A stretch of DNA of 47,379 nt from Oopsacas minuta (Eukaryota > Animalia > Porifera). Both the position numbers and the translations under genes were made by a program. A model generated the notes under the pieces. The model worked only from the letters and a program-made list of their open reading frames with translations. It did not search any database and was not told the DNA's origin. How positions within the stretch are numbered: position 1 is the stretch's first letter; each line of letters opens with the position of its first letter. Positions 348-47,379 of this stretch are shown piece by piece. The stretch spans positions 1-47,379 of the forward strand of contig JAKMXF010000102.1 of NCBI GenBank assembly GCA_024704765.1, read 5' to 3'.

Positions 348-351
348 TATG

Positions 352-4982: not shown

Positions 4983-5034
4983 AACTGCTCGAGCCAGTTT
5001 TCAAAAGACTAGAGGAACTCAAATATTAACACCA

Positions 5035-10512: not shown

Positions 10513-10513
10513 N

Positions 10514-12475: not shown

Positions 12476-12605
12476 GTGAAAGTAATAGTAAGAACAAAAT
12501 TGAATTCAAATAAATAAAATTTGAAAATCTTACTAGTCTATATTCATTACATTACACCAGAAACAACGAGAAGATGGGGCAGGTTGGTTACACCAACATT
12601 ATATA

Positions 12606-13970: not shown

Positions 13971-14189
13971 TATATGTTTGTATATATATCTGTGTCCCAT
14001 CAGTGGTGGCGCAGTAGCGCTCCACTGCATTACACTGAATAATTGCATTATAACAAAATTTTGTGTAGATTGCAGGATACCGTGTTCTATAAAAGTTTGC
14101 CTCCTGGAAATTAGAACGCCCTAAAAACAGAGACGGGTACACTAAGGTAGAACTAAACACTAATACTGCTAGTGAAGTCATAAATCTAT

Positions 14190-16780: not shown

Positions 16781-17104
16781 TATCACATAGGATGGAAGGC
16801 ATAAATTTCTTGAATAGTAGCCTAGGAACTAGTATTACACCTACATTTGGCCTTTTATGCTTATGAACACTAACTACAACACTGTTTAACGGCCATATAG
16901 ATGACTAATGAGAAACTTTTAATAAATAATAGATTTATGAGAAAATTGTGCGAATAATTTGTTCTTGCATTTGTAAATAAAAATTTAAGGTAAGTTCTCT
17001 CTATGGATTCATCAGATATACTCATGGGCCTAACTGTATTTTACATCGTGTGTGTTAATAGTACAAAGATACATCATCGTGATTCATGAAGTATATGTGA
17101 TCTT

Positions 17105-17245
17105 TGGAGGTATATTGGGAGTATATTGGAAGTACGTATATTGGAGGTATATTGAAGGTATATTGTGGTATACCGAAAGTTTATATTTTTCTGGTATAAT
17201 TTATATACCTAATTATACCATCGATATACTTCCTCGAGTGTCTAT
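17105..17245. repeat. GTATATTG(G) tandem array, probably a hAT-type subterminal region
   Basis: Five GTATATTG units at ~11-15-bp spacing followed by ggtataccga, a motif also seen near 12415. Confidence 0.5.
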
Positions 17246-19813
17246 AAAGTTACAGGAAAACTAAAATCAACGATTTAAGTACAACAACTAAACCATTACC
17301 AATATTTAAATATTTTGACCAATGAAATTCACACGAAATCGGGAATTTCTATCACTTCACGATTGAAAGAGGGAGGTAAAATTATCTGAAAGAGAATGCA
17401 TTAAAGCTGCACTTTTCACATCATCAAGGTAGCAAAAAAGCTCTAATATTTAGAATTAAATAATTTTTGGTAGGAAGAAGCGATATAAGGAGGCAATATA
17501 ACCTGGGGAGGCAAAAATACCCTGCGGCAAAAAGCAGATTTCGACAGTACCAAAATGGCCACGAATATAGCAACATTATAAAGGATCATCTGCCAACTTG
17601 ACAACATTTTTGCTATTATTACTTTACTCAAAATTTAGATAATTGATACATGGAACTTTACGGAACCATACAATTTAAAGCAAATTTTCATCATTACTGT
17701 CTTACATTAAATAATGAAATTTCGAGTAATCAGAGATTATATCGCCTCACACCATGCGAATTCTGAAACGGATGTGTTTGTATGCCCCGGAATAGCAATC
17801 CCTATAATGCCTTAGTATTCCATCCATGTTAGCTAATATTTCTCATATTTTATGCCTTTGGGAAACTCAAATTCTTAAGATATTTTCATTCTTGTATATT
17901 GTCGTGTTCTACAATTTTTCCAGCCCGCCATATTGTGAAAGAAATTTCCTTACCAATACGTTGAACATGTTATCTAATCATAAATAACGTATATGTATAA
18001 TTATATGATAAATTATAATCACATTTTGTAGCATGCGTTGTTTCGTTTTAGTTTATGAGTTTATCCGATGTGTTTACATGGTGACGCCGAAAATGATTTT
18101 GATAGGCCGCATACTTTGGAATTACAGAGAAACGAGTAAGAGGATCTATAACAGATATTCCTATCGTAACTAATAATGTGGTTAGTGGAAGAGTGCTTAT
18201 TTGAAAATAACAAGTGGTTTTCATGCTTACTGAAGTAGTAAAACCCCAATATATTATTTTCGGAGTATTTCACAATCGAATAGTTTCCTTGGGAAACATT
18301 TCTTACCTTTTTTGATTTCCATCACGTACATGTATTTGATCAGAACTAATCATGAAAGTTAGACCGTAACCCATAAAATTCTTTATTGTACAAAATCAAT
18401 TCAATGTATATATTCTACCAATCATCTAAATTTCTATTGATTAACACATCATATCATATACCAATATAGTAAATTCATTGCATAATTCTTGACAGTAGAA
18501 TTTCATATGAAAGCAATTGTGTCAAATTGTTTGATATGTTTTCAGAAATTTGATTCTACTGAATTGAGACCTATCATTCTGGATCAGAAAATGTTGTTAT
18601 ACAATCTATATTCAAATGAAATACGCAGATGAGGAAACTAAGTGGTCATTTTTCCGAAAAAGCTATGAAGGTTGTGCCAAGACACTCTCTCATCATGTTG
18701 AAGGTCCTACTAGGTATAAACTCCTTGTTCTTTGCACAATCGCAACCGAAGATTGAAGAATAATGCGGAATCACCTTCACATCAGGTATGCATGATCTCC
18801 AAGAGAAGTGTTGGGCAGTCTAAAATTAAGAATGCAACTCAAATGGAAGAATGTATTGATATACCTGAATCTGAGACTAAGAGATGCGCCTGAGGAATGT
18901 CCAAATGCTCTACCTCTACAATTATTGATCTTGCAGACCAGTCAATATTGTCCAGAATATACTAAAATTCTTGAAGAGAAAGAAAATATTGCTGAAGATA
19001 TTGTTGCAAATTTTCTGCTTTAACGGATTGATAAGGACAATTTAGCAGAAATATCGGTTGATAATCTGCGTGTGAGTTTACTTCATGGGCCTTATGGTAG
19101 TATACCAGTGCTGCCAAGTGAATTGAGAAAAATTTACGGAGATTGACCGATAAATTTTCGTAGAAATCAAATTATTTACGGAACATTTTAACATCCCTTA
19201 ATGACCCCCAACTGGTCTTGATTTGGTTTTACAAATACCATTAGCTAACAACTTTTTATTAATAATTATTAATAAATGCAGATTTATGGACGCTTTCGCG
19301 TTGTAAACAATAAGCTATAATCACTACCAGCATGCAACAAACTATCAAAGTAATATTTTATATGGTCGTACATACTTTGAGAAAATCACTCGTACATTTC
19401 CGAAGTCGGTACAAACGTTGAGGAAATTTGAATATCGACCTTCATCATTAACAAAAGTATTACACGTACATGTAATTCGCTTGAAATACGTAGAAATAAG
19501 CCTTCATACGTAGATACTTAGATAGCAGTCAATTATACGTAGTCTACATATATTTACAGAGACTTGGCAGCACTGTAGTATACATGTCCCAAACTTCAAC
19601 GATAATGCTCCTATTGAATTACAGCAAGATCTTGCTATTTCCAACCGTAACTCTCATAAATTTTGCCATATTTATTCATAAGCATGGTGTGAAAACTCCT
19701 AGCCTTACCTCTATCACAAATTCAAATGAGAGAAACCACTTCAGATCTCTTTGCCCAGAAAACTCTCTTGTTAGAGCAAAAAATCAGCAATATTTCAAAG
19801 AGAAGGGTTAACG

Positions 19814-21184
19814 CAAGCGTTTCTCAACCTTTTCTGTCGGTCGCTCCCTTCGATGATCGGGCCATCCCTCATCTCCCCTCTCGTCTATTCCGTTTGTATA
19901 TTAATTTATATTACCAAATACTAAGACATAATATGTTTAAATTTATCATTTGTATAAGTTTAGTGTGAAGGTTGGGCCTGGTGCCCAGTTATAAGATTTT
20001 TCAGATCGGGACTGAATTTGATCAAGAAGAGCCGAAGGTAACCACGCTTGGTTGTCTCCAGCCTATTCCTCTTCTTTGTGAGAAGTCCAACAACGGCTGA
20101 GAGACCCTTCTCCACGAGATACGATGTTGGAAAATACAATATCATCATTTTTGCGCGGGCCCATAGAGCAGGGTATTGATCAGCAATATTGCACCACAAA
20201 ATGTTGTAGTATTGTTCAGGGAACGAAGACTTCACTGTATCATCGCTATGTAAATCAATCAGTGATTCCTGAAGTTCAATAGGTACCTGTTGCTGTTGCA
20301 AATTGCACGAATACGGCGGATAATCCATCCAGGTATCTCCATATTGATAACGTGGCGAAACGTTCTACAAAATATTCCTTAAGATTCTCAAGATGATCCC
20401 AGAATCTTAGAAGATCTTCAGTTGAGACCTGATTTTGTATCAGGTTTGGAAACTGTCGGAGTTAGCCGCCACTTACATTGGATTTGAATAGTTTTAGTTT
20501 AGTAATGAATGATGGAATAACAGTAAGACATTCACTATAGTCATATTATTTCCCTGTAGTTGTTTGTTAGACTCATTCAGTATGAAGAATATGTCTGAAA
20601 GATATGCCACATCGTTTTCAGGAATATCAGTTTCTCTGCTGTCTCATTATCTTGCAGCGTCTCCTCAAAAACTCTATAACAGTATCGTACAGTACGTAAA
20701 ACCTTGTCAGACAGACTCCTTTAGATAGCCAACGAACCTCAGTATTGAGTAACAACCGCTCAAAGTCCTCATCGTTATCCTGGCATAAAAGGCGGAAAAG
20801 GCGATCATTCAAGGAATTAGCTTTAATTCTGTAGATGCACTTGATCATGAAATTCAGAGTGTCATGCAGCTCACGACTGAGGTGTTTAGCCGCGAGATGG
20901 TGGTATCATAAGATTGTTGCATTATTTATCGCATCATCTAGAATTTCAGTCGAAACCAACTATTGTATAAAAACAATATTACGTGATTAACAAACACTAT
21001 GTATCCTAATATGGATAATTATATGGATTTGTGTTTTCTAATTACAATTACAATTACATAATTATTTCGGTCGGATATTCCAGCTTCAACCTGTGCAGAA
21101 TGAAACCATCATTCGTCGCTCCCAGTCGTTTTATTGCCACCTTATCGCCCCTGAACGTTTTATCGCCCACGTTGGGAAACACTG
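19814..21184 (-). mobile_element. internally deleted hAT (Buster/Charlie, ZBED5/SCAND3-type)
   Basis: TIRs caagcgtttctcaac / gttgggaaacactg with 8-bp TSD GGTTAACG / GGTTAGCG. Protein fragments NTEVRWLSKG, FPTSYLVEKG and HQAQPSH. Confidence 0.92.
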
Positions 21185-22462: not shown

Positions 22463-23253
22463 TTTAGTTTTTAAAATGTCTAGGCACCTATTGCAATACT
22501 GGGCCACTATACTAAAGTCGGCACAGTAGAAAGTAGAATTGACCATACAGGCTATAATATCAAGGATTATCGTACTACTTTTCTGCTCGATGCTTCCATT
22601 GATATAATATGTATTGATAACTTCTCGTTGTTTGTTTAAAGATTACACTATTCATTCCTAAATATATCTGAGAAATTGTTTCATGATTCAAACCTACATG
22701 GAAGTACAAAGGCATTTAATGTAGTAACTGTTATAGCTTATTGTCCAAAGTCTTCGAGCCTTTCACGATTGGAAGACCTACAACACCTCAGACCCTCAGC
22801 TGCAGTAGCTTCGTACATATGTAACTGTGTCATACCCAAATATTTTCCGAGCTACACATCATTACTCAGCCAGAAAAAAACAACTTTTCTGGTGCAATTG
22901 CAGACCAAACGTTATTTCTTTCAATTGTTTGGCTCTTGGACTTTACAGATTATTTACAGCGCCCATAGGCTTTGAAATCTGGAGTGCACAAATTCAGTCT
23001 AATAGGAAACATCTAGAACTTGTTGACAACTAGATTGAATTTGTGCCGCCCATATATCAAAGCCACAACGCAACTGACCCGCTGGATGGTTCTACCCAAC
23101 TAAAATTGATTGCTCCTCCACTGGGATATCAACGGGAGCTGTTCATTCCATACTTATCGATGAGCTGAAAGTTAGCAAAATTTGTTCGAGGTGGATCCAC
23201 ATTCCCATACAAAGCCCAAAAAGCACCGTCGGGCAACTTGTGCAAGAAAAATN

Positions 23254-24856
23254 CTTACATTCTGCAGACTGAGCATCGAATTTCTTCTGCTTATCATCTG
23301 AAACAAATGGACAACTGGAGAGAGATAACCGTACCCTGAAATCTGCATTGGTGAAATTGGTAAATGAAAGAGGTGATGATTGGGATATGTATATCTCAGG
23401 AATACTATTTGCTTATCATGCAAGCATTCATGCTTCTACGAAATGTACTCCATTTCAAGCGATGTATTCTCGTACTGCGAAGCTACGAATTGATTTGTCC
23501 ATTAAACCTCCAAATCAATTGAGCAGGCGAACCCAAAAGTTTCACAAGCGTTTGGCATGATGCGGGATGCTATCAACGCCAAAATTAATCTTAACATCAC
23601 AAACGCATAGAAACATCAAAAAAGCGCAACTTTGATGACCGTCATTCTAATAGTAAAGTGTTATCACCTGGCACAACTGTGTACAAAAAAAACTGCTAGC
23701 AAATACATCGAATGGGATCGAAAATGGAACCACGCTGGATGGGTTATTATAAAATCATTGAGTTGCTAGATAAAGGATGTGCAATCCTAGAGATTATTAA
23801 CACAGGTAAGAAACTAAAAAATATATATAATATTGCAAATTTTAAGGTTTATGATTCAAATAACAAAGCTGAAGATGGTAAATCAAAGAAAAAGGAAAAC
23901 AATTTCAATATCACATTTTAAGATTAAGAAACTAGAGTGTACGGTTGAGCTAGCTTTAATTGGAGTTAAACAAGGAGTTAAACAATTCAACCCAAACAGA
24001 CTGTTTTTCTCTAATTTCCGCTGAATCTAGAAAAAATGTTGCCAATGTTCTCAACTTGAACATATGCAAGACCCAATACTTTGGAAAACCTGGCTACCTA
24101 TCTAAACCAGAGCAGATATACCGAACTAAAGGTGATGGTAATTGCTATTCCCGAATCAATAACCACATCCTAACAAGTCCAGAAGATAGCCATATAATAT
24201 TCGTAATAAACTTGTCCATCACATGAGTGGTAGTTTGAGTGAAACACTAAGAAAGTTTTTTCTCAAACGGTTACGAATTATGTCAGCGAAAGTGCCATTG
24301 ACTCCAGTGTTGTTTGGGCAACCGAGGCAGAAATACTGACCACAGCTAATCTTATTCAACATGATATCGTTATGTATGCGAAGAGTAGGGATTCTAAGGA
24401 ATGGCTTACATGCCCTGCATCTTTTACATTGACAAAAACAACAGAAACTACATTGTATCTGGAAAATTTAGCTGAACACTTCAACGTAGTCATTAATATA
24501 TAATGATGTTAGAAACATAGACAATATTTTTCCTATCTGTTCATTAGTACCCTAGATTCATTATTGTTTTCGCACAACTCAACACACCTTATATTCATTA
24601 TTGTATTAGCAGATGATTTAATAGAACTATTTGAACTATAAGCTCATTGGGGATATTTACGCAGGTTATAAACTAGGCTAGGCTAGTTTATACCCAAGAT
24701 GTTAATCTAGGCTAGGCTAGTTTATCCCAGGGGGTTAAACTAGGCTAGGCTAGTTTATACCCAGGGAGTTAATCTGGGCCCAGAAGGTATAATCTGGGCT
24801 AGCCCAGTTTAAACCTTGGGGTATATTCTGGATGGAGGTTAATCTAGGTTGCTACA
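23254..24856 (+). mobile_element. Ginger1-like DNA transposon, 3' half (Gypsy-type integrase, GPY/F module, OTU domain)
   Basis: HRISSAYH..TNGQLERDNRTLK, PRWMGYYKI and GDGNC...HFNV. Ends ...ctaggttgctACA with a subterminal tandem array. No RT or LTR seen. Confidence 0.75.
24665..24850. repeat. subterminal tandem array of ~33-bp near-palindromic units
   Basis: Three copies of (aaa)ctaggctaggctagttta(t)accca plus degenerate ctgggc(ta)gcccag copies. Confidence 0.85.
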
Positions 24857-25350
24857 CCGAATTAAAACCACCGCAAACTACTGATGTCCAAGTTTTAAAT
24901 CCTCAATTTTACACTCCGAATATAATTTCGTTAAATGTTATGCCCTTAGAGGAGCGTCGGCGTTCTTAGTTTTCCCTCGGCGCCAGTCAAAGATTTCTCA
25001 TTGCTATAAATATTTCAAATTTCATTAATGTAAATCCCTAGCCTCCCCTAGAAAAACTCATGATCTAGATGTATATTATTACGCTTTATGATTTAATTTT
25101 GTGTGCCTTGTTAAACCCATTTTGAAATTATCGAAACCTAAGAAGTTCGATCTGAAATATTTGTGATATTCTTTACATATCGGTATCAATTCATTCTATG
25201 GTTCCGTCCATTTTGAAAAGTTCAGCTTTTGGTATCTATAAATTTCTTAATACGTACTTGACATACACATACACATTTACCTCCTAATTCTTATGGTAAA
25301 CTTTCCATTAACAAGAGACTATATTTTCAAATTTTGCTTTAATCTTGTAG

Positions 25351-26829
25351 TTAAAGGAAAACTATTCTTTAGCAAAGAGCGAAGCACAAAATAGTTTTGG
25401 AGATAACAGGCTATTGATCGAGAAATACATTCATAATTCTCGCCATATCGAGATTCAGATTCTATCCGACAATTTCGGGAATACCATTTCGCTGAATGAA
25501 AGAGAATGTTCAATTCAGAGACGAAACCAGAAGATTATAGAAGAGGCTCCTTCCACTTATGTTGATAATCAATTGAGAGCATTGATGTCAGCTCAAGCAA
25601 TCTCTCTTGCTAAATCTGTAGATTATAAATCCGCAGGTACCGTAGAATTTCTTGTTGATGAATTTCAAGGATTCTATTTTTTGGAAATGAATACTAGGTT
25701 GCAAGTAGAACATCCTGTAACTGAATACATAACTGGGTTCGATATTGTGAGAGAAATGATAAACATTGCTAAAGGGGAACCTTTAAGAATTACGCAAAAT
25801 CAGGTCCCAATGTTAGGCTGGGCAATTGAGTCTAGGATTTATGCAGAAGACCCTGTAAATTTCTTACCCTCCATTGGTAGAATTACTCAACAAGTTCTGC
25901 CTGATATTGATGGCAATATTTTACGATTTGATTGCGGTTTTACTTTAGGGTCTGAGATTACTATCCATTATGACCCTCTACTTCTAAAGTTAATTTCGTT
26001 TGGCAAGAATAGAGAGGAAGCAATTTCAAACTTAATTTTCGCATTAGATCAGTATATCCTCTTAGGTGTTAAAACAAATATTCCATTCATTTATTCAGTA
26101 TTGACGTGTTCACAATTTATACGAGGAAAAACTCATACAAATTTCATACCCGACGAATATCCTGGTGGCTTTACGGGATTAAAATTGAGTGAAAGTGACC
26201 AACACGCAATAAAAATGTGTGCATTTTTTATTTTTATCAATAGGAATACTTCTTTTGATGTCATTCCGCATTCAAAGATTTTTCCCTTCCCAACTTCTGA
26301 GATAAAATTATGGAATGTAATAATTTCTGGTGATCATTTGGAGAATTCCACTGTTATTGAAAGCGTTTCGGAGACAAATTACATCATTAAAGATTCTTTT
26401 ATTAAAGTTTCGGATGTTCAATTAATATGGAAGTTTTATGATCCATCACTTAATCTTCGAATCGGGCCTAATGTTTGGAATTTTCAATTCCTAAATTGTA
26501 ATCATGATTACATAACAATTGGCTTTAAAGGGGATATTCACCAATTTGAAGTACAAACCGTTAATGAATATGCTTCATCTCAGTACATTAAACCTAGGAC
26601 TGAAGATTCGAATTCCTCTTTCCTTACAGCCCCTATGTCTGGCAGAATTCATGATATTTTAGTGGATAAAGGGGATGATGTTATTAAAGGTAGCAGTTTA
26701 TTGATAATTGAAGCAATGAAGATGCATAACGTTTTAATTTCTCCTAATGAAGGGAGTATTAAGGAAATCAATTTTCGGATTGGTGATAATGTTGTTGATG
26801 GGGATTGTCTTTTGGAATTTGTGAATTAA
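25351..26829 (+). CDS. PCCA: propionyl-CoA carboxylase alpha chain, exon 2 (492 codons plus stop)
   Basis: Acceptor ttttgctttaatcttgtAG at 25349-25350, then LKENYSLAKSEAQNSFGDNRLLIEKY, RHIEIQ, ERECSIQRRNQK, FLEMNTRLQVEHPVTE and the biotinylation motif EAMKM. Confidence 0.93.
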   Translation, partial: LKENYSLAKSEAQNSFGDNRLLIEKYIHNSRHIEIQILSDNFGNTISLNERECSIQRRNQKIIEEAPSTYVDNQLRALMSAQAISLAKSVDYKSAGTVEFLVDEFQGFYFLEMNTRLQVEHPVTEYITGFDIVREMINIAKGEPLRITQNQVPMLGWAIESRIYAEDPVNFLPSIGRITQQVLPDIDGNILRFDCGFTLGSEITIHYDPLLLKLISFGKNREEAISNLIFALDQYILLGVKTNIPFIYSVLTCSQFIRGKTHTNFIPDEYPGGFTGLKLSESDQHAIKMCAFFIFINRNTSFDVIPHSKIFPFPTSEIKLWNVIISGDHLENSTVIESVSETNYIIKDSFIKVSDVQLIWKFYDPSLNLRIGPNVWNFQFLNCNHDYITIGFKGDIHQFEVQTVNEYASSQYIKPRTEDSNSSFLTAPMSGRIHDILVDKGDDVIKGSSLLIIEAMKMHNVLISPNEGSIKEINFRIGDNVVDGDCLLEFVN

Positions 26830-27195
26830 AAATTTTTCCTAGTATATTCTGTAATTGCCAAATTTACATTTCTATTCATTAAATTTGGATATAATATCGA
26901 AGATTGAAATCGTTTTTATAATTATATACTCTCCAACTAATTTAAGAAAGATTGTTCTCGAACATTGGATGATCACCCTATGATTTTTACAACGCTGATC
27001 CCAACTATCTAATTATTTTCCCACCATCAACCATTGTCTTTGAGAATGTGTTTTTCGTATATTTATTACATTCAGGGTGTATTCCAGGCCTATGCGACAC
27101 GCATATTAGCGCATAAATTTAGGCAAATATATAGGCCTACGAATATTTCTCTAAGCCATTAAATATTTCTCTCTATTTGTAGATAGAAACTCATA

Positions 27196-28503
27196 TAGAG
27201 TGGCCCATAAGTTCTGTCCTACAGATAAAAGGTCATAATTTTGGCAAAACTCACTGAAATGACTTAAAATCTTAACACAATAACATACACATTATTTGGA
27301 TAATAATATATATTAGGCTTATTCAGTATCCACCTTTTTTCTTAATTACAGCCCTAAGTCGTGAAGGAACCGCCTCTGCTGCAATTCGCATGGTTTCCTG
27401 AGGGATTTCACTCCAAGCACGTATTATTGACCGCTTCAGGGCCTCCAAATTTTATGGGATTTACAACAAGCCTTTGTTTATAATATAGACCAAACTGAGA
27501 AGTCTAGACGGTTAAGGTCCGGACTAGATGGGGGCTATTCCTGTTTGGAAATAAAGTCAGGAATTTCTGAGTGAAGCCAGCTTTGAGTGGTATTTGCTGT
27601 ATGAGCAGGGCACCGTCTTGTTGGAACAAAAAGGGTTTATTGTTAAACATTGACTTGCTAAGATCTTTGACTATAGGATTTAGAACAAGTTTTTGGTAAA
27701 TTTGAGCATTTATTTTTACCCCAGTTGTGATGAAAACTATTGGAGTCCGGCCAAGTGAGGATATTCCAGCCCAAACCATAACAGAACATATTTTCGGTGG
27801 TCTTTTTGCATATCTGTACTCCTCAGGGATGGTAGACGCTGTAGGAGACAATATTATGTCGTTTTGTTGATTATAAGCTTCCTCTATCGGAAATAATTTC
27901 TCATCTGAGAACAAACGTGATCAAGACCTTGGACAGCGAACCTGTCAATGAGACCTTTGCTTCTCTTCAGCCTTTTCTCCTTCATTACCTTTGAAAGATA
28001 GTGTACTTTACGTTTTTTAAATGAGAATAAACCCAGGTCTCTTTTGGTAATTCTTTGGAGGGAAGAACGAGATACTTTGAGCTCTGTAGCCATTTTTCTC
28101 ACCGATCGGCTGGGATTTCGCTACACACGACCTATTACGATTTTTCTCATCTTTGTTGTCGTTACAGATGCGGGACGACCAGTTGTGGACTTGTCAGAGA
28201 CGCCGCCAAGATCTTTATACCTATTAATGGTACGGTATACAAACTTTCGCCTCGTTTTAGGAATATTGAGAATTTTCAAAATTTCACTTTGATCTTTTCC
28301 CTTTTCGATATAATTCGATAATTGTCAACCTTTCCGTTTCCATCGAGGAATTTGTCTAGATAAAACTATGAGATGTTAAGATGAACTGTTTAGAATACTT
28401 ATAATCCTAAATAGAAGCTTGAAAGCAAAACCTATTACCTAGCTTTGCCATAAAATCTATGGTTATGTAGTAAAGTGTGGGACAGAACTTATGGGCCACC
28501 CTG
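27196..28503 (-). mobile_element. full-length maT (DD37D) element, transposase pseudogene
   Basis: TIRs (c/t)agggtggcccataagttctgtcc flanked by TA. ATG at 28343 (METERLTII), then FSDEKLF and QQDGA...SPDLNRLD with 37 residues between the Ds after frameshift correction. Confidence 0.9.
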
Positions 28504-29080
28504 TATATCTTAATATTAAATGTATTGTCAAGGCGTATGAAATGATTTAGAATCTATTTCTAGTCTTATGGCCTGAGAACTTGAAAACATGTTTACATTC
28601 CTTGCAAATTATATAGAAGACCTTATAGGTCAAGTGTAAATCATATTTATACCCTTAACAAATTAGAGATATGTATTTATCTGAACTTTTAAATTATTTT
28701 GTCTTAGATCGATTTATGAAGCAATATTAGTATAGTCACGGAACCCTATATTACCCGGACGTGACAAAGCCAAACCACAGTCAAAATGCATAGGCTGAAA
28801 ATTGTTAGACTGAAAATATGGTCAATTCTGTATTCTAGTCACTAAATTTGGTGTCTAACATAATCTTTGGGCGCTGAATCCAAAAATGACAATTTAAAGG
28901 TTCATAAACTCACTCCCCGCCCTAATTGGGGAAAAAGGCGTAATCACACCCAAATATGCTCAATTGCATATTTTTCTATTACGTCATCATATCACTAAAT
29001 TCGCAATTTCCTCTCAACTAGGAACAATATTCATGAACATATGATAAATAAATTGTTGACCTAAATATATATTACTATAA

Positions 29081-29175
29081 CACAGGTCAACAAGGTATTT
29101 TCATTACAGATCATCTAGGATTTTTCTAACGTGATTTTTTTTGTCCTGATTTCAAATCTGCTCTTCGTTTTTATC
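29081..29175 (+). mobile_element. Chapaev-type terminus interrupted by Tc1
   Basis: TAA|CACAGGTCAACAA terminus related to those at 31311 and 33059, but a shorter, different subfamily. Confidence 0.6.
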
Positions 29176-29177
29176 TA

Positions 29178-29327
29178 CACTGCCTGGCCAAAAGTATTGG
29201 AACACCCTGCCACAATTAATACCTGAAACAAAGGGTATGCTCTCATAGTTGTATAAGCTAAAGATGATTTCAAAAAATGTTCAACATAAATATATCGTAA
29301 AACGAATGATAACAAGCTATTGTTCTA
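29178..29327 (+). mobile_element. Tc1 terminus cut by gap
   Basis: TA|cactgcctggccaaaagtattggaacaccc is a typical Tc1 TIR. Confidence 0.75.
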
Positions 29328-29328
29328 N

Positions 29329-29496
29329 TTCCATGGTCAATCACAATTTTTTTTCGAAATAGAATACACCAAATTGAAATAATATTTGTTAGGAAGCGTA
29401 TAAGGTATGTCATGGGAGAGCAAACCATTGAGAATATTTCCTGGTAATTGTTGTATATTAATCATGATTTTGTATCAGAACTTTGGAGCCACCCTG
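29329..29496 (-). mobile_element. 5' end of a second maT element
   Basis: TIR cagggtggctccaaagttctgatacaaa is identical to 42846-42873. The minus strand ends ATG GAA right at the gap. Confidence 0.8.
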
Positions 29497-29999
29497 TATT
29501 CGGGCAAAATGCACCTAATTGTATTATCGTGAATAATATTATTGCCTCTAATTTAATGGAGTATTCCACTCGAGCCCTTGGAAGCACTGCTTCATCCCTC
29601 CGAAATCTACTTCATGGATTTATCTTTGTCCTTGTTTTGGTTTACTACATGAGAAATGGGCGAGAGACAAGATCATTTGTCGCATTTTACATCCTATAGA
29701 CCGTCCGGATCCAATAGAAGAATCCGAATATCTACTAGAGGTATTTTGACGAATAGCACTGTGGCTATCAAACACCTGAAAAATATACATGGAATTTCAA
29801 AACTTGATTATTATTCAAACCGAATGAGACGATTAAATCTGTAAATCTTGATGGATTTAATGTTGATTTGACGGGCAATTACAAAGTAAGCACAGTTATC
29901 TCACTAAGCATACAGTAAAAACCCTTAATCAATTATGAGCAATGTTTGCTCATTATGTCATATGTCTTAAATGTAGTTATACGTGATCTTCACGCACAG

Positions 30000-31100
30000 T
30001 CACAAATTTAAGGAGAGGGCATGCGTCAATTTATGAATTCAGCTGTTGTGTCTCCAATATAATTGGGTGGCGAATATTTAGGCCAAATGGTGGATTTATT
30101 GCGTGGAAGAATTAAAGACAAGCTCTTACTTATTGAAATTTGAAAACATGGTACTTCTAATTCTCAGGCTCTATTGATTTATGGCATTCGAAAGGGATTA
30201 TTGGCATTATTGTTTCTCATATAGAACCAATTACATTCCAACATACGGTTATTTTTATAGGAGTAGTAGAATTCACAGATTCACATCAGGAGAATTGACA
30301 TAGGGAAGATAAATGATATAATTCTCAATTCGAAATACCTGGTTGTGGAAACATTAGTGATCTTTCATATGCCGTATCACATGATAATTTTCCAAAGTTA
30401 CTGAAGGGAAACAAAGACTATTCATGCCGTTTGCCATACTATTTAAATGACTCCAAGTCATGAGTTATTTCAAGGAATTTCAAGATATCCCTATGTCAAC
30501 TTTATCACACGCGCTAGTGATATTATACAATCAGCTAGGAATATTATTGGACATTTTCATCATGTTTCGGATACCAATTATGGTTTCATTCAAATTTATT
30601 CTGGCCATGATATTCCTCAAAATGATCTTATACAAGATAACGACACAAGATGGGACTCATGACTTAATTTGTAGCTTGATAAATAATTTAATATTTTGAA
30701 TTATATGCCCTTCAACACCCTGGAAAATCTATGACTTAATGTATCCAAAGAGTAATTTTGGATTTTATGGAGTTCTATCCAAAAACAAATGGGTGACTAA
30801 ATTATTGCAAGGCGATTATCCCACAATATTAATACATCCATTCATCAAGTTTCTATTAAAATCTCTTAGTCCTGAACGCCCTATATTTATTGAGACTCAT
30901 TGCTTAAGTGTAATGCTAGACGAGGAAAACTTGAATGGCTAGTATTGAGTATGCCAATATTGTATCTAGTTCTTCTGTTGAGAGGTTGTTTAGTGCCGCA
31001 GGTAGAGTAGTTACCAGGTACAGAGCAAATCCTAAACCTGAGGGCGTAAAATTATATTAGTAGTTGATACAAATGAGGACTAATGGATGGAAGACTCGTG
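30000..31100 (+). mobile_element. degenerate hAT transposase
   Basis: IDLWHSKG, AVCHTI, IIGHFHH, LIQDNDTRWDS and VERLFSAAGRVV occur in order. Confidence 0.75.
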
Positions 31101-31310
31101 GGAAGGAACAAAAGGATACTTTCATGCAAACCTTTTTCAAAGAATTAGTAGGCAGAAGTTTTTCAAGTTGGCCTGTTTAAACAAAAGCAAAAGAAGAATG
31201 ATAAATGGACAAAAATTTCGAGACTAGCATTTAGGAAATATCATTTCTAAAGTCTCAATTGGAGAAAATTTTATTAGGAATATTGCCATTTTTACAAATT
31301 CTTATAATTA

Positions 31311-32712
31311 CACAGGTCAACAAATTTTCACTTATTTTTCTCATCAAGCAAAATGGGTATTTTTCTAGACCACCTTTTGTGCTGATTTAAACCCTGCTAT
31401 TCATTCCTCTCTAACACGTATACATTTTTATATTCTAGCTTGGAATTTTCGAATTCAATTCGAAATATTACATATTTTATTATCCTTACTTAGTGCTAGA
31501 AGTTGTTCAGCTAACTAATGTTACTTGTTATTTGAGTCTTAATCTGATTAATTCAATAATTCATTGAGTATCAAATTAGAATCTAACTATCTTGCAATAG
31601 AAAATTGAAAAAATTTCACATTTGTGAAATATATAAGTTGAATAAACAAAAAGAAAAAGGTTTAAGACGTCAAAAACGTTGAGAGTAAGAATTTCTTTTG
31701 TAAACTCTATTGGCTTCATCCCTGTATAACACCCAGCAATAGTCCGCCATCATACTGTCATTCCAGAACCTTGATATCGATTTTCCATTCTGAGAATGTC
31801 TTGGTGAAATCGTTCGCCCTGTTCATCGCTTACAGCACTAAGGTTTTCTGGAAAAAAATCAAGATGGGAGTGCAAAAAGTGTAATTTCAATGACATACGG
31901 CATCCCATGTTTTCATATGATTGTATTAAGTTTTTTACTCCCTCTATATACTCTGTTGACTTCATATTACCTAAAGAGTTTTCACAAATCCATTTGAAAG
32001 ATTTCCAAGCTGTGAATTCCTTAGCGGAAAGTATATTGTCAAATTCTTCATCCTTGAGAACTTCACTAATTTGTGGTCCAATAAATACACCCTCTTTAAC
32101 CTTAGCATCACTTAGTATGGGAAATTTCTCAACAATATAGCGAAACCCTGTAGAATGTGTTTTACCCATTGTTTTGACGAAAGTTTTCATCAATCCGAGT
32201 TTTATATGAAGTGGTGACAAAAAGATAGTATTAGGATCTACCCATAGTGTATATTCAATATTGAATGTTCCTACTTCAATATTTGTCCCCCTGGGCTAAT
32301 CACGCTTTTTGAAATGATCTATTGTTGTACCACTGCCCCATAAACAAAGAAAGCAACAATATTTGGTGGATCCTTGTTGCAGTCCCATTAACAGACCAAT
32401 GACCTTAAGATCCCCACATGTATTCCACCTGTATGTTCTATATTTGATTGCGGCCAAAACTTCTTCCAGGTCTATATGGGACTCCTTAAGATATACAGAG
32501 TGAACAATTGGAATTGCAGGATTTTTATTTCTGTTATGCAATAAAACGGATTTGAAGCTACGTTTCGATGAATCAATATATAGGCGCCAATCAGAAGATG
32601 AACGTCCCTGTGACAAACTAGAAAACAGCTCATCAATATCATTAGAATAACAGAGAGGACCATCAGCTGTAAAATATTGAGCCAAATCAAAATTTCGTTT
32701 ACGCTAGTGGGA
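31311..32712 (-). mobile_element. Chapaev3 (CMC superfamily) transposon, 3' part
   Basis: CGDLKV, PLHIKLGLMK, MSLKLHFLHSHLDFFPENL and SDEQGERFHQD. TIR TTA|CACAGGTCAACAAA. Confidence 0.85.
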
Positions 32713-32713
32713 N

Positions 32714-33059
32714 TATTTCCCCTTAGTTTGTGAGTAGTTGATACATGCATGAATGTGAATAATTATATGTAAGAGCTAGGATAATAACTGATATTATCTT
32801 GGCATTAATCTAAAACATCGAAACGTTGATTGATTTCTGATGGCTATCATGTAAGAAGACAAAAAGACAGCCACTACCATAAAATAACAGGAAAAATTTA
32901 GGAAATACATAAAAATCGTTGACTTGTAATTGGAAAAAAAAAAACTGGACGTGCTGGAAAGAATCTGAAACCAGATTTGAATTCAGCGTAAAAAACTAGC
33001 TTAGAAAATGTCAATCTAATACTTGATGAGAAAATGAAGTTAAATTTTGCTGACCTGTG
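32714..33059 (-). mobile_element. Chapaev3 5' end, inserted into a Ginger integrase
   Basis: The ~100-bp TIR (minus: CACAGGTCAGCAAAATTT...) aligns with 31311 onward. Flank is TTA at 33060-33062. Confidence 0.8.
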
Positions 33060-34655
33060 TTATAGTTAAGACCCATTTATAGCCATTTCTTGAGAGAATA
33101 TCTTCGCTATCGAAATCTATTTGTGTCAGATCAATTTGGACACGTTCGAAAACACAGGATGTTTTAATGTGCTTGTAATGTCCTCGCTTGGAGAAGTGCA
33201 ATGGTAGGCAAGCAGATTTCACAATTCTACTCGGAATAGGTATTCTTGAAACGATAGTCTTCTGCACCCCAAATGTGGAAATGAGATTTTATAGATTTAA
33301 TAAGTGCTGTAAGTTTGGGGTGATTTAGTTTGTCGTGGTAGCATTCAATAACAATTTGTAACATTCCATCTGATAAAACAAGTTTCTCTCCTTTTTTCAG
33401 TAAGTAACCATTAACTGTGTTTCCTAAAGTATAAAATATAATTTTAAGATCTCGATTAGAAAACAGGCTCTTTGAATGAAATTTATCTTACCTTAAGAAT
33501 ATGCTCGTATAGTCTTTTCTGAATAAATCCTCTCTACAGTTTACGGTTTTCTTTGACTTTTGGTTTGATATTCTCAATTGACAACCTAATTAGTTATGTA
33601 TTGGCCCATTGCTTTTCGATGCTGTTTCCAACTTAAATATGTGATATGCAATACATACATCTGATCCTGAGAATTTTCGCCTTTTGTTCAGCAATACTCT
33701 CAAATCACCAAGAGTGAACATATCAGGTGAGATTTCGGAGACAAGAGGAAGTAATTCTGTCAGTTTCTTGGAAAGTTCACCATTAACTGTGCTTTCTTGA
33801 TCAAGGGTTTCTGGAGAATCTGAAAAAGATGTTTCGAATTCACATGCATCCATAGAGTATTCAAAATTGGACTTTATAAAATTCAGAGTTTAAATTTATG
33901 AGATTAAATGACAATATGCAAATTAAACACAAGGAGAATACTATATAATGTGATATGCTAAATACAATCTAAGCGCATACATTTATACGTAGTAGAAACT
34001 GACAAGAAAATATAATCTGCGATAATATGTATTGTATTTTCAGGACATTAGTTATCTTTTACTACCAACTCATAAATATAGTTTCAAGTGCTAAAAAATG
34101 ATTGATTTAGAAATGCATCATTGTTAAATATTATAACAACTAGATCCTTATTAACCACACAACCCTAGCAGTAATATAAGTTTACCAGTTAGTCGGGATT
34201 CATATAACAAGAAAGTATAACTACAATACGCTCTAGTCCACGAACGACGGACACACAAACGTCTCACTTAGTGAATGTGTTCAAAATAATCAAGTAACAC
34301 AAATTCTGTGGAGATTCAATAACATGAATGTATGTGATAACCCACTAAGGGAATTTTGTGGCTTGATCACCTTTATTGATCACTATTATACAGATAAAAC
34401 ACTAAACTGAACAATAAATCACAATTTTTAATTTGGGGAGGGGGCACCCCAAAATATCGAGGGCGATCCAAAATATATGATAAGTTATAAAATTTGGGGG
34501 GAGGGCACCCCGAAACTTGAGAGACCTCAGGATTATAGATCACTATATAAAATTTGGTGAGGGGGCACCCCTAAATAGAGAGGACACCTCAAAAATTAAA
34601 GATAAAAAATTCCATTTGGGGGAGGGGGGGGGCCACTCCCAAATGAACCTCTACA
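33060..34655 (-). mobile_element. Ginger2-like element, 5' part (260-bp G-rich TIR, spliced HHCC-integrase N-half)
   Basis: Minus strand starts TGTAGAGG. GT-AG intron at 33424-33491, then YHDKLNH..CQK and RVQIDL..GYKWVLTI, stopping at the Chapaev3 insertion. Confidence 0.8.
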
Positions 34656-34660
34656 ATAAC

Positions 34661-35212
34661 TAGTTTCCAAAAGGGATATGTTGTTATTTATAATTCGATT
34701 TTCCTTAATAAGCGCAGAGCTTTTAAAAATCTTATTTAGGGAATGCTATTCAATTATCACAATTTTGAATCTGTATATTTTGACCGAATTTTTTGGTGGA
34801 TTTTGATCAAATTTTCTTAGCTCGAACTTTGATCGAAATTTCCCTTTTCATCATTCGATCAAAGTTCGACATAAGAATATTTGATCAAAGTTCTACAAAG
34901 GCAATTATTTTTCAACGAGTTTTTCAGACGATATCCCAGAAGACTCCAGATAACTAATGTATTAACAGAATATATTTGTATTCACTAAATAGTATAAATA
35001 AAATTATGTAATCTAAACATCTAAACACATTTCTTTGCATCTGCACAATATCGCACTCCTCCTACTATGTGACAAGAACATCTGTACATCAATATCTGAG
35101 CTTCTAAGATTCAAAAAATATTTTGGGGTACCTGCCCCCTGTCCCCCCTTACCGTTACTCAATTAGCTGGCTCCAGAGCACCCTCCTCACGATAATCCTG
35201 GATACACCATTG
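34661..35212 (-). mobile_element. non-autonomous hAT-like element, one arm (host of the Ginger insertion)
   Basis: Terminus cctggatacaccattg (35197-35212) matches cctggatacgccactg (46091-46106) at 14/16. Both are flanked by GAACC once E is inverted. Confidence 0.7.
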
Positions 35213-35308
35213 GGTTCCACAAGTCCAGAATATCGTCAAGAGGAATAATCCAATATCCAGCGAAATACATAAATCACTGAATACTCACTCTTTGGGTATG
35301 ATTGACAA

Positions 35309-35407
35309 ATGGTGGCATGTATGCAGCGCTCTGAATATGGGAAACTTTAAATTCGTGAGATTCGTGAAAAATCTCACGATTCTATATTTAGATTGCAAAT
35401 TGGTATT
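35309..35407. repeat. 99-bp exact inverted copy of the window end
   Basis: Identical to the reverse complement of 47281-47379, with internal cgtgagatt/aatctcacg inverted motifs. Confidence 0.9.
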
Positions 35408-35735
35408 TTTGTGTTGACTGACACCTTATAGCCATGTAATTTCAATATATTATCAGGGTTTGCCGTACACTATCCTAAATCCGTATTTCATAAAGTTTCA
35501 TGATAGAGCTCTAAATTTTCTACCACGTATTCATATGATGGTGAACTCTCTAAATATGCTATAAAATCACTTTGTAAGGGTAAACTGAAAAAAGGGGTAC
35601 AATTTCCGATGAATTTCACATGGTTCCCTGTTCCATACCCAGAATGGTCCCTTTCCCCTACAACAATTCTTGATCCTCCTTTACTAGATGTTCAACAATT
35701 GCTTTTAATGATAATCTAGCAGTTTTATCTATGCA

Positions 35736-36386
35736 ATGTTATTTTCTCTTCGATCTTTTCTAGTGGAACGATCTTTCCATCATTTAAGGCATCGTTTTTA
35801 TGATATTAGTTCCAGATCCAATTCGAAGTTTTATCATGAACATTCTCTTTCACAACTTCCATTTGATAAAATCCTGGTTGCTAATCGTGGTGAAATTGCT
35901 TGTCGGATCATTAGAACATGTCGTAGCATGGGAATTAAAACCGTTGCTATCTACAGTACTATTGATAGCCATTCATTGCATGTACGGCTTGCAGACGAAT
36001 CTTGGTGTGTTGGTCCTCCATCAATTTCTTCAAGTTATTTAAACATGGATTCAATTTTGAATGCTGCAATTTCTACTAATTCACAAGCTGTCCACCCTGG
36101 TTATGGGTTTCTATCTGAAAATTATAAATTTGTCGATTTATTAGAATCTAATGGGCTTGTTTTCATTGGTCCTGGTTCTAATGCTATCAAATTAATGGGA
36201 GATAAAATTCAAAGTAAGCTTTTAGCCCGAAATGCCAATGTCAATACAATTCCTGGCTACCTGGGAGTTATTTCTGATGAAATGCATGCCTTTGATATTG
36301 CTAATGAAATTGGATATCCCATAATGATTAAAGCTTCAGCCGGTGGTGGAGGAAAAGGGATGAGAATTACCAACGATCATGAACAA
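35736..36386 (+). CDS. PCCA: propionyl-CoA carboxylase alpha chain, exon 1 (217 codons: mitochondrial presequence plus biotin carboxylase N-part)
   Basis: Arg/Ser-rich N-terminus, [23 protein letters not shown] and [13 protein letters not shown], with donor CAA|GTAAGC at 36387. Joining to 25351 gives a continuous 709-aa protein. Confidence 0.93.
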
Positions 36387-40314: not shown

Positions 40315-40369
40315 GTAAATCAGAGCCTAATTCATTCATGTGCTCAGTTAATTAATTAAACTTCCTATA

Positions 40370-43154: not shown

Positions 43155-43202
43155 CTAAGATAATTGTATGTGATCTCTGATGAGAGATCTCCTTAAGTTG
43201 TG
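43155..43202 (-). mobile_element. 48-bp terminus of a CACAACT-type (Chapaev/CMC-like) element
   Basis: Ends ...ttaagttGTG|TAA. Its first 31 bp are the exact reverse complement of 46262-46292. Confidence 0.65.
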
Positions 43203-46058: not shown

Positions 46059-46063
46059 GTTAT

Positions 46064-46106
46064 GAAGGGGTGTTTGAACACCCAAATCCGCCTGGATACG
46101 CCACTG
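46064..46106 (+). mobile_element. other arm of the hAT-like host element
   Basis: Ends cctggatacgccactg|GAACC. Confidence 0.7.
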
Positions 46107-46244
46107 GAACCCTTTAATTTCGCTCAAAAGTGATGTAATGTCATATAAGCTAAACTTACAGTAATTTGGCCAGTTATCAATTTGTCAAGCTTTAACTTAC
46201 GATAGTTTTGTTGGAATTTCAAAGTAAATCAAGATCATAAATAA

Positions 46245-46292
46245 CACAACTCAACAAGATTTCTCATCAGAGATCACATACAATTATCTTAG
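46245..46292 (+). mobile_element. CACAACT-type element terminus cut by gap
   Basis: TAA|CACAACTCAACAAGATTTCTCATCAGAG... Confidence 0.65.
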
Positions 46293-46926: not shown

Positions 46927-47379
46927 TACACGGTGAGTAAATATGAAAATAACTATTTTGTTCGTATGTCGGGGAGTGTCTGTATATTGTTTGAATTTTG
47001 TACTAGAAATTAGGATATATTCAATTAAATTTGAAATTTGAAATACCGCTCCCATACTTATAATTAGAGCAGGACATCCCTGCAAGATTGCAGGCAAATT
47101 TACGTAGTCTACGTAAATTTACGAAGATTCGGCAGCACTGGGCGGACTGGCCCACCGGTCCACCGGCCAGTTTCCGAGTGGTACATACTAAAAGGATCTA
47201 ACTCACAAGATCTCATCTTGAGTCTCACGATTTCGGGTCTACCAATACTACAGAATCCCTGTTGTCTTTCAATTGAAACCAATACCAATTTGCAATCTAA
47301 ATATAGAATCGTGAGATTTTTCACGAATCTCACGAATTTAAAGTTTCCCATATTCAGAGCGCTGCATACATGCCACCAT

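What the first reader, a model, noticed from the sequence alone, without database searches (positions are those of the whole stretch)
25351..36386. PCCA exons in reversed order on the same strand: trans-splicing or mis-oriented scaffold
Seen: exon 2 (25351-26829) lies about 9 kb upstream of exon 1 (35736-36386). Both are intact, with a phase-0 donor CAA|GTAAGC and acceptor tgtAG|TTA that join seamlessly (RITNDHEQ|LKENYSLAKSEAQNSFGD) into a 709-aa protein. Established: PCCA is an essential mitochondrial biotin enzyme, and cis-splicing cannot join exons in this order. If the layout is real, it needs genic trans-splicing, back-splicing or a tandem duplication. Counter-evidence seen: the exons sit on different contigs (C and E) separated by two n joins, and reverse-complementing C, D and E in place makes the gene collinear with an intron of at least 12,248 bp. 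I judge the artefact more likely, but C's orientation is fixed only by PCCA itself.
Basis: partly seen in the sequence, partly recalled or inferred. Interest (0 to 1): 0.75.

Follow-up and report, generated by a model that had tools for sequence, protein, structure and literature searches.

The report
Scaffolding error splits sponge PCCA gene
The two halves of this glass sponge's propionyl-CoA carboxylase gene look back to front only because the assembly program put neighbouring pieces of DNA in the wrong order, so the gene is almost certainly an ordinary two-exon gene with one very long, transposon-filled intron.

Summary
Exon 2 (25351-26829) lies upstream of exon 1 (35736-36386) on the + strand. 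Both are intact and single-copy, and they join seamlessly into a PCCA protein.

The layout is an assembly artefact. The window is a whole super-scaffold of the Oopsacas minuta assembly, seven contigs joined by single-N SSPACE joins.

- Every contig end lies inside a transposon.
- None of the six displayed joins continues its transposon across the join.
- Transposon halves match up only if the order is reversed: B-end to A-start, E-end to D-start, C-end to B-start.
- A filled-versus-empty insertion site with two matching target-site duplications shows that contig E is flipped relative to F.

I checked the same error independently on scaffold C17. PARP1's four exon blocks, bounded by N joins, are in reverse order with orientation kept. 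Other first-stage readers had noted this pattern elsewhere in the genome.

With the order E-D-C, PCCA is collinear and has canonical GT-AG splice sites. Its intron is at least 12.2 kb assembled plus at least 2 kb missing, and at least 63% of it is repeats. A Vazella transcript joins the two exons at exactly the predicted point.

Trans-splicing is not needed. The D-to-C join is inferred, not directly shown.

The parts
35736..36386 (+). PCCA exon 1 (217 aa): mitochondrial presequence, Biotin_carb_N, and the first 61 profile positions of the ATP-grasp domain. Lies in contig E.
   Evidence: single copy in the genome
36387..43153 (+). First part of the intron (rest of contig E), starting with donor GTAAGC. 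It holds MITE-like repeats (36751-37127, 37522-38263, 38580-38961), a 2.7 kb multi-copy element (38977-41671), and the first 310 bp of mariner TE-Y (42844-43153), which runs off the contig end.
29329..32712 (+). Contig D, the inferred middle part of the intron. It starts with the last 171 bp of TE-Y (29329-29499). It ends inside a PIF/Harbinger-like element, TE3 (31307-32712, about positions 1-1406 of about 2300).
23254..25350 (+). Last part of the intron (start of contig C). 23254-24863 is the 3' 1.6 kb of a roughly 2.9 kb element, TE-C, whose 5' 1.27 kb is absent from the window. 24864-25350 is unique sequence ending in the polypyrimidine tract and acceptor AG.
25351..26829 (+). PCCA exon 2 (492 aa plus stop): rest of the ATP-grasp domain, Biotin_carb_C, and the biotinyl domain with the AMKM motif. 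Lies in contig C.
   Evidence: single copy
29328..29328 (.). Single-N SSPACE join C|D, one of six (10513, 23253, 29328, 32713, 43154, 46293). TE-W (a MITE, position 152) on the left meets TE-Y (position 1146) on the right, so there is no continuity.
32713..32713 (.). Single-N join D|E. TE3 position 1406 on the left meets the last 350 bp of TE-V on the right, so there is no continuity.
23123..23252 (+). B-end: an internal piece of a mariner-like element (TE-M). Its continuation, 362 bp further on in the full copy L039, is A-start (1-349), in the same orientation. This gives B then A.
1..349 (+). A-start: the downstream part of the same mariner-like element TE-M.
29077..29327 (-). C-end: the last 100 bp of TE3 in reverse orientation (29077-29177), interrupted by the first 152 bp of the MITE TE-W (29176-29327, + strand).
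10514..10643 (-). B-start: TE3 positions about 1381 down to 1252, in reverse orientation. It is 100% identical to the reverse complement of D 32558-32687. It fits C then B through an inverted TE3 copy.
32714..34655 (-). E-start: the last 350 bp of TE-V (32714-33063, + strand), followed by the left 1.6 kb of a 4.45 kb TIR element, 'TE-Big' (33064-34655, reverse orientation). Its right part is F 43207-46066.
43155..46292 (+). Contig F: the right 2.9 kb of TE-Big, bounded at both ends by outward-facing first 52 bp of TE-V copies. The TAA duplication at 33064/43204-43206, the GTTAT duplication at 34656-34660/46067-46071, and an uninterrupted copy in scaffold C78 show that E-start adjoins F-start.
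47281..47379 (-). G-end: an exact 99-bp reverse-complement copy of E 35309-35407. This is the length of the largest SPAdes k-mer, so it is an unresolved repeat or branch point, 329 bp upstream of the PCCA ATG.

Best explanation
The reversed exon order is a scaffolding artefact. The window is one SSPACE super-scaffold of the published Oopsacas minuta assembly. SPAdes contigs broke inside young transposons, and repeat pieces under 1 kb were discarded. SSPACE then linked the right neighbours but wrote a run of contigs (at least A to E) in reverse order with orientation kept. This is the same as flipping each contig in place. It put a single N at each join.

In the real genome the order is E, D, C on one strand. 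PCCA is therefore an ordinary nuclear gene with two exons, cis-spliced at a canonical phase-0 GT-AG intron. The intron is unusually long for this compact genome: at least 12.2 kb assembled plus at least 2 kb missing. It is long because it has been filled by nested DNA transposons.

Shown: the exons and their junction; the transposon-bounded contig ends; the wrong E|F, D|E and A|B joins; and the same error on scaffold C17. Inferred: the D-to-C adjacency, the size of the gaps, and the cause. One possible cause is that outward-facing Nextera mate pairs, or one side of a scaffolding seed, were mishandled.
For: 1. Identity of the assembly. The genome is 61,460,524 bp in 365 scaffolds and the window is the whole of scaffold C102. 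This matches O. minuta (61.46 Mb, 365 scaffolds; PMC10282587). The methods were SPAdes with k up to 99, scaffolds over 1 kb kept, SSPACE with paired-end and Nextera mate-pair reads, then Pilon and GapFiller (PMC10280926).

2. All twelve inner contig ends lie in repeats, and 0 of 6 displayed joins continue the same element.

3. Complementary transposon halves join the contigs in the opposite order.
- E-end is TE-Y positions 1-310 and D-start is TE-Y positions 1146-1316, in the same orientation, in three full copies.
- B-end and A-start lie 362 bp apart in one mariner copy.
- C-end and B-start carry TE3 positions 2300-2200 and 1381-1252, both reversed.

4. E is flipped relative to F. The C78 copy is contiguous from the reverse complement of E 34576..33060 into F 43203..45078. 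The site has a TAA duplication, and the termini of the enclosing element carry a 5-bp GTTAT duplication.

5. Independent case on C17:1-22163. The PARP1 domains on the minus strand are zf-PARP x2, then PADR1 and BRCT, then PARP_reg, then PARP catalytic. They lie in four blocks bounded by N 10824, an N-run at 14470-15007, and N 17973. Each block is internally correct, but the blocks are in reverse order.

6. A Vazella pourtalesii transcript protein (P0241) aligns to exon 1 aa 104-217 and then to exon 2 aa 1-490, with the break exactly at the predicted junction. Exon-1-only and exon-2-only ORFs occur in other glass sponges, twice on contigs of the same length (686,723 and 75,481 bp).

7. The exons are unique in the genome.
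Against: - The D-end to C-start join is not directly supported. D ends at TE3 position 1406 and C starts at TE-C position 1273, so at least 1.27 kb is missing.
- TE3's last 100 bp at C-end could instead belong to the TE3 copy at D-end. That would put exon 2 on the opposite strand.
- The simple 'whole scaffold reversed' rule fails for F. The nest logic needs E-start next to F-start, so F (and perhaps G) is not flipped.
- My look at scaffold C78 was inconclusive.
- An intron of about 15 kb is roughly 70 times the average of 194 bp reported for scaffold 133 of O. minuta (PMC10282587).
Confidence: 0.9

Rival explanations
1. The layout is real, and PCCA mRNA is made by genic trans-splicing of two separate primary transcripts, or by exon-order-scrambling splicing of one long transcript. 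The exon 1 donor would join to the acceptor of an upstream exon 2.
For: Both exons are intact, with good donor and acceptor sites. Glass sponges have spliced-leader trans-splicing machinery: a leader of about 37 nt is reported in Aphrocallistes vastus (PMC10282587). The order as deposited is C before E.
Against: The order rests only on single-N joins, and transposon continuity contradicts the neighbouring joins D|E and E|F. The same reversed-block pattern affects PARP1 on another scaffold, with breaks exactly at N joins. That would require scrambling to coincide with assembly gaps. The corrected order gives a plain collinear gene.
Confidence: 0.02
2. Contig C is truly inverted relative to D and E, because one TE3 copy runs from D-end into the reverse complement of C-end. 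Exon 2 would then lie on the opposite strand downstream of exon 1. This would be a real inversion, perhaps polymorphic between the inverted TE3 copies, that breaks the gene in the sequenced haplotype.
For: D ends at TE3 position 1406. In full copies TE3's last 100 bp follow about 800 bp later, and that piece is present only as the reverse complement of C 29077-29177. An exact 130-bp inverted repeat (D 32558-32687 versus B 10514-10643) flanks contig C. The DNA came from non-clonal, different individuals (PMC10280926).
Against: B-start carries the matching TE3 piece in the orientation that continues C-end, giving C then B. In every join where orientation could be tested (B to A, E to D, and the three C17 joins), orientation was kept. 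PCCA is single-copy with both exons and splice sites intact, which is not expected for a disrupted gene.
Confidence: 0.04
3. A tandem duplication of the locus, collapsed by the assembler, makes exon 2 of copy 1 appear upstream of exon 1 of copy 2.
For: Exact 99-bp and 130-bp repeats at contig ends show that some sequence here is present more than once.
Against: Each exon is found once in the assembly. No diverged second copy exists in the window or the genome. The repeats are transposon pieces, not gene sequence. Read depth could not be examined.
Confidence: 0.01

Closest known systems
Propionyl-CoA carboxylase alpha chain (PCCA), mitochondrial, of animals (e.g. human PCCA, PDB 7ybu)
   Same: The domain order is the same: Biotin_carb_N, ATP-grasp, Biotin_carb_C, BT region, and a biotinyl domain with AMKM. 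The best PDB matches are PCCA for both exons (E 6.9e-73 and 2.9e-114), ahead of MCCA (5.1e-50 and 4.3e-83). There is an N-terminal extension of about 40 aa before the catalytic core.
   Different: There are only two coding exons, against 24 in human by my recollection. The single intron sits inside the ATP-grasp domain and is very long and full of transposons. This two-exon structure is shared with other glass sponges.
Mis-ordered or mis-oriented contigs in short-insert/mate-pair scaffolds (SSPACE-type super-scaffolds with single-n joins)
   Same: Joins are marked by a single N. SSPACE writes a single n when the estimated gap is not positive and no overlap is found; this is my recollection of the program's behaviour. 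Contig ends lie in repeats, and order and orientation errors coincide with the joins.
   Different: The error here is systematic. Runs of contigs are in exactly reversed order with orientation kept, seen in at least two scaffolds (C102, C17). I found no paper in the held library that reports this for the assembly.
Genic trans-splicing of split genes (e.g. Giardia Hsp90 and dynein, Drosophila mod(mdg4)); named from my own knowledge
   Same: On paper, the two exons are not collinear yet have matching splice sites.
   Different: In the known cases the split is confirmed on contiguous genomic sequence. Here the non-collinearity exists only across unsupported scaffold joins and disappears when they are corrected.

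Membership tests
PCCA (biotin-dependent propionyl-CoA carboxylase alpha subunit) | Biotin carboxylase N domain, ATP-grasp and C domain in one chain | tested here: met
   PF00289 and PF02786 positions 1-61 are in exon 1. PF02786 positions 64-210 and PF02785 are in exon 2.
PCCA (biotin-dependent propionyl-CoA carboxylase alpha subunit) | C-terminal biotinyl (BCCP) domain with the biotinylated lysine in an AMKM motif | tested here: met
   PF00364 matches exon 2 aa 426-489. The motif IIEAMKMHN is visible in the translation.
PCCA (biotin-dependent propionyl-CoA carboxylase alpha subunit) | Closer to PCCA than to its paralogues (MCCA, pyruvate carboxylase, ACC) over its full length | tested here: met
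   For exon 2, human PCCA scores 385.6 bits against 282.8 for MCCA and 257.6 for PC. For exon 1, the scores are 247.7 against 173.0. Named database hits are PCCA. A separate single-ORF paralogue exists on C340 and a multi-exon one on C110.
PCCA (biotin-dependent propionyl-CoA carboxylase alpha subunit) | Enzymatic activity with a PCCB partner | not tested
Genic trans-splicing | Exons non-collinear (wrong order, strand or locus) on verified contiguous genomic sequence | tested here: not met
   The exons are separated by two single-N joins. The neighbouring joins D|E and E|F are contradicted by transposon continuity and target-site duplications.
Genic trans-splicing | Separate primary transcripts joined in the mature mRNA | not testable with these tools
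   No O. minuta RNA data were available. A relative's transcript shows only that the mature junction is exon 1 then exon 2.
Scaffolding artefact (contigs in reverse order, orientation kept) | The anomaly's breakpoints coincide with scaffold joins | tested here: met
   For PCCA the exons lie in contigs C and E. For PARP1 on C17 the block borders are N 10824, the N-run at 14470-15007, and N 17973.
Scaffolding artefact (contigs in reverse order, orientation kept) | Independent sequence features (split transposons) are restored by the corrected order and broken by the displayed order | tested here: met
   Restored joins are B to A, E to D, and C to B, plus E-start to F-start with two matching duplications. 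0 of 6 displayed joins are continuous. The D to C join is inconclusive.
Scaffolding artefact (contigs in reverse order, orientation kept) | Read pairs or long reads contradict the displayed joins | not testable with these tools

The most novel reading that the evidence does not exclude
The deposited order is real, and this glass sponge makes its only PCCA mRNA by trans-splicing (or order-scrambling splicing) of an upstream exon 2 onto a downstream exon 1. Its lineage is reported to have spliced-leader trans-splicing.
Probability: 0.02. Interest if true: 0.85.

Novelty: not a real feature. Interest (0 to 1): 0.12.

Why it matters
As biology, the finding is ordinary: a normal PCCA gene.

Its practical value is as a warning about the public Oopsacas minuta assembly, the first glass-sponge genome. 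The paper reports 936 scaffolds merged into 365, which implies roughly 570 SSPACE joins. In the two scaffolds I examined, runs of contigs are in reverse order.

Any gene that spans such a join will be mis-annotated as fragments. PCCA and PARP1 are shown here. TopHat was also capped at 5 kb introns, which would hide this intron in any case.

Small 'inversions' inferred from synteny with Aphrocallistes, and apparent gene scrambling or trans-splicing, may be artefacts. Claims of missing or truncated genes near joins deserve a second look.

A lesser point: PCCA in glass sponges has been reduced to two exons. The surviving intron has become a transposon sink about 70 times the average intron length reported for one scaffold of this species.

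Tried and rejected
- **Synteny in relatives.** I could show only that they share contig lengths (686,723 and 75,481 bp).
- **Target-site duplications for TE-Y and TE3/TE-V.** TE-Y has a TA duplication (mariner type). TE3 and TE-V have TTA/TAA (PIF/Harbinger type). These are fixed by the element type, so they cannot match up the two ends of one insertion. Only the TAA empty-site comparison and the 5-bp GTTAT of the enclosing element were informative.
- **Looking for TE-C's missing 5' half in the window.** It is absent.
- **Scaffold C78 as a second independent test.** Its contig ends did not fall in the families I had copies of. Its copy of the large element runs from contig 3 into the reverse complement of contig 4, so the result was inconclusive.
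- **Other genes spanning joins in this window.** There are none. The only clear host gene besides PCCA is a single-exon protein kinase in contig A.
- **An inversion model for the exact 130-bp D/B repeat.** I rejected it because any such inversion implies a non-functional ancestral PCCA.
- **Joined protein.** Each exon was searched by reference on its own.
- **The large representative-protein search and structure prediction.** Not used, because the family was already clear.
- **Human sequence.** No contig looked human.


Full report
**What the window is.** The window is the whole of scaffold C102 of a 61,460,524-bp genome in 365 scaffolds. Earlier notes of this scan call the genome a glass sponge. 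The size and scaffold number match Oopsacas minuta: 61.46 Mb and 365 scaffolds in Table 1 of PMC10282587, and 365 scaffolds in PMC10280926.

That paper's methods are:
- SPAdes 3.9 on Illumina plus corrected PacBio reads, with k up to 99.
- The 936 eukaryotic scaffolds went to SSPACE (-k 5 -a 0.7 -n 15) with 'all Illumina reads'. These included paired-end and Nextera mate-pair libraries.
- Pilon and GapFiller followed, giving 365 super-scaffolds.
- DNA for the different libraries came from different wild individuals.

The window holds six single N's. It is therefore seven contigs: A 1-10512, B 10514-23252, C 23254-29327, D 29329-32712, E 32714-43153, F 43155-46292, G 46294-47379.

- 35736-36386 (+) is an ATG-initiated 217-codon open frame, followed by GTAAGC.
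- 25351-26829 (+) is a 492-codon frame plus a stop, preceded by a pyrimidine-rich tract and AG.
- Pfam places Biotin_carb_N and positions 1-61 of the ATP-grasp model in the first piece. Positions 64-210, Biotin_carb_C and the biotinyl domain are in the second.
- Against solved structures, exon 1 aa 39-216 aligns to human PCCA 59-236 and exon 2 aa 3-490 to 240-727. The join loses no residue.
- PCCA scores well above MCCA and pyruvate carboxylase for both pieces.
- Each piece occurs once in the genome. The genome has only three biotin-carboxylase genes, each with one N and one C domain. tblastn finds no pseudo-copies in the window.

**Relatives.** Word searches with each exon found exon-only ORFs of the same extent in other glass-sponge assemblies.
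- For exon 2: P0002 to P0005 (469-491 aa, 54-65% identical).
- For exon 1: P0121, P0123, P0125 and P0126 (214-222 aa, 69-81% identical).
- In two cases the exon-1 and exon-2 ORFs sit on contigs of identical length, 686,723 and 75,481 bp.
- The 90% cluster of P0004 contains a transcript-derived protein of Vazella pourtalesii, P0241 (604 aa). Its residues 1-114 align to exon 1 aa 104-217 and residues 115-602 to exon 2 aa 1-490. The break is exactly at the predicted junction.

So the two-exon structure and the exon 1 to exon 2 mRNA are conserved.

**The joins are not trustworthy.** I searched the contig ends against the rest of the genome and fetched full copies of each repeat family. Every inner contig end lies in a transposon.

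| Contig end | What it holds |
|---|---|
| E-end | first 310 bp of a young, high-copy 1.3 kb mariner, TE-Y |
| D-start | last 171 bp of TE-Y |
| D-end | position about 1406 of a 2.3 kb PIF/Harbinger-like element, TE3 |
| E-start | last 350 bp of a related 2.3 kb element, TE-V |
| F-start and F-end | first 52 bp of TE-V copies, facing outward |
| C-end | last 100 bp of TE3 (reversed), interrupted by the first 152 bp of a 260-bp MITE, TE-W |
| C-start | position about 1273 of a 2.9 kb element, TE-C |
| B-start | TE3 positions 1381-1252, reversed |
| B-end | inside a mariner-like element, TE-M |
| A-start | the downstream part of TE-M |

None of the six joins as drawn continues the element on its left into the element on its right.

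**What the transposons say about the true order.**
- TE-Y. In three full copies, E-end and D-start are the two ends of one element in the same orientation, with about 835 bp missing between them. This gives E then D, not D then E.
- TE-M. In a full copy (L039), B-end is followed 362 bp later by A-start on the same strand. This gives B then A.
- TE3. C-end and B-start are successive parts of a reversed copy with about 925 bp missing. This gives C then B.
- The missing stretches are mostly under 1 kb. That fits repeat contigs lost to the 1 kb filter.

The strongest single case is E|F. A copy of a 4.45 kb TIR element in scaffold C78 (L018) runs without interruption from the reverse complement of E 34576..33060 into F 43203..45078. 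In the window a TE-V copy sits at exactly that point, flanked by a TAA duplication. The termini of the enclosing element (E about 34655, F about 46066) carry a matching 5-bp duplication, GTTAT. E-start therefore adjoins F-start. E is flipped relative to F, as another first-stage note (s1-293607) had proposed.

All these adjacencies are satisfied if contigs A to E are each flipped in place. For that run of contigs, this is the same as reversed order with orientation kept.

**An independent test elsewhere in the genome.** Other first-stage readers had noted 'contigs in reverse order, orientation preserved' on several scaffolds. I treated these notes as leads and checked one.

I located PARP genes with PF02877, fetched C17:1-40000, and mapped exons by tblastn with the C22 PARP paralogue and by Pfam on the minus-strand ORFs. 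All the exons are on the minus strand.

| Block | Coordinates | Domains (minus strand) |
|---|---|---|
| 1 | 1-10823 | two zf-PARP domains, 6277..2695 |
| 2 | 10825-14469 | PADR1 (14254..14039), BRCT (12487..12080) |
| 3 | 15008-17972 | PARP_reg, 17728..16697 |
| 4 | 17974-22163 | PARP catalytic domain, 20492..18611 |

Each block is internally correct for a minus-strand gene. But the N-terminal block has the lowest coordinates and the C-terminal block the highest. The blocks are in exactly reversed order with orientation kept. The block borders are the N at 10824, the N-run at 14470-15007, and the N at 17973. The same error therefore breaks a second conserved gene at scaffold joins.

**Consequence for PCCA.** With the order E, D, C on one strand, the gene is collinear:
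- exon 1;
- intron, made of E 36387-43153, about 0.8 kb of TE-Y, D, a gap, and C 23254-25350;
- exon 2.

The assembled intron pieces sum to 12,248 bp, of which at least 63% is recognisable repeat. The D to C gap must hold at least the 5' 1.27 kb of TE-C, which is absent from the window, and probably the rest of TE3. My estimate is therefore about 14-15 kb. The gene is therefore very likely annotated in pieces.

**What remains open.**
- The D to C join is inferred from the pattern and from the gene itself, not from a split element.
- TE3's last 100 bp at C-end could in principle complete the TE3 copy at D-end, which would invert exon 2. I rate this low for three reasons. B-start supplies the matching continuation of C-end. 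Orientation was kept at every join where I could test it. And the gene is intact and single-copy.
- D 32558-32687 and B 10514-10643 are exact reverse complements over 130 bp, while other TE3 copies are 86-95% identical to them. This suggests two inverted, homogenised TE3 copies flanking contig C.
- G-end is an exact 99-bp reverse complement of E 35309-35407, the length of the largest SPAdes k-mer. It is an unresolved repeat or a polymorphic insertion 329 bp upstream of the start codon.
- F, and perhaps G, is not flipped like A to E. The error therefore looks like mishandling of one side of a scaffolding seed, or confusion caused by F's inverted TE-V ends.
- The cause is only a hypothesis, for example outward-facing Nextera mate pairs treated as inward-facing. 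The paper does not give the library orientation.
- My look at scaffold C78 was inconclusive.
- No paper in the held library mentions the problem.

**Verdict.** Trans-splicing, back-splicing and duplication are not needed and have no positive support.

Noticed in passing
G000:C17:1-22163 (loci L045-L047): PARP1 on the minus strand is cut into four blocks: zf-PARP x2, then PADR1 and BRCT, then PARP_reg, then the catalytic domain. The blocks lie in reverse order with orientation kept. Their borders are N 10824, the N-run at 14470-15007, and N 17973. This is the same scaffolding error as in this window.
   Followed up: yes
window 47281-47379 and 35309-35407: There is an exact 99-bp reverse-complement match between the very end of the scaffold (G) and a site 329 bp upstream of the PCCA ATG. 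The two sequences diverge immediately after 35407. It could be a repeat boundary (LTR-like if E is flipped relative to G) or a polymorphic insertion.
   Followed up: partly
window 32558-32687 and 10514-10643: There is an exact 130-bp inverted repeat inside TE3 between D-end and B-start, while other genomic copies are 86-95% identical. In B the match ends at ...ACGTAG|GTAACG. This suggests two inverted TE3 copies flanking the exon-2 contig.
   Followed up: partly
window 23123-23221 and G000:C358:146093-146191 (L022): The last 99 bp of scaffold C358 are identical to a mariner piece 31 bp from B-end. This is another k=99 graph overlap. Both contigs stop in copies of the same element.
   Followed up: no
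window 33064-34655 and 43207-46066: A 4.45 kb DNA transposon with TIRs of about 260 bp and a 5-bp target-site duplication (GTTAT) is split between E (reversed) and F. A 2.3 kb PIF/Harbinger-like TE-V is nested in it with a TAA duplication. A second TE-V starts 174 bp beyond its right end.
   Followed up: yes
window 7279-9153 (-): A single-exon 624-aa protein kinase gene (Pkinase, E 1.9e-59) lies in contig A. It is the only clear host gene in the window besides PCCA.
   Followed up: no
G000:C78 (41,454 bp; loci L018, L040-L044): This scaffold has seven contigs joined by single N's. Contig 3 has 138-bp inverted identical ends. Its copy of the 4.45 kb element continues from contig 3 into the reverse complement of contig 4. 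The joins here look wrong too, but I could not resolve the pattern.
   Followed up: partly
proteins P0002-P0005, P0121-P0129, P0241: Other glass sponges share the two-exon PCCA structure, with the intron at the same codon. In several assemblies the two exons lie on different contigs, which hints that the intron is long or repeat-rich there too.
   Followed up: partly
G000:C340:143518-144849: A second biotin carboxylase gene is encoded in one 690-aa open frame, probably the MCCA paralogue. A third, multi-exon one lies at C110:448967-451680.
   Followed up: no
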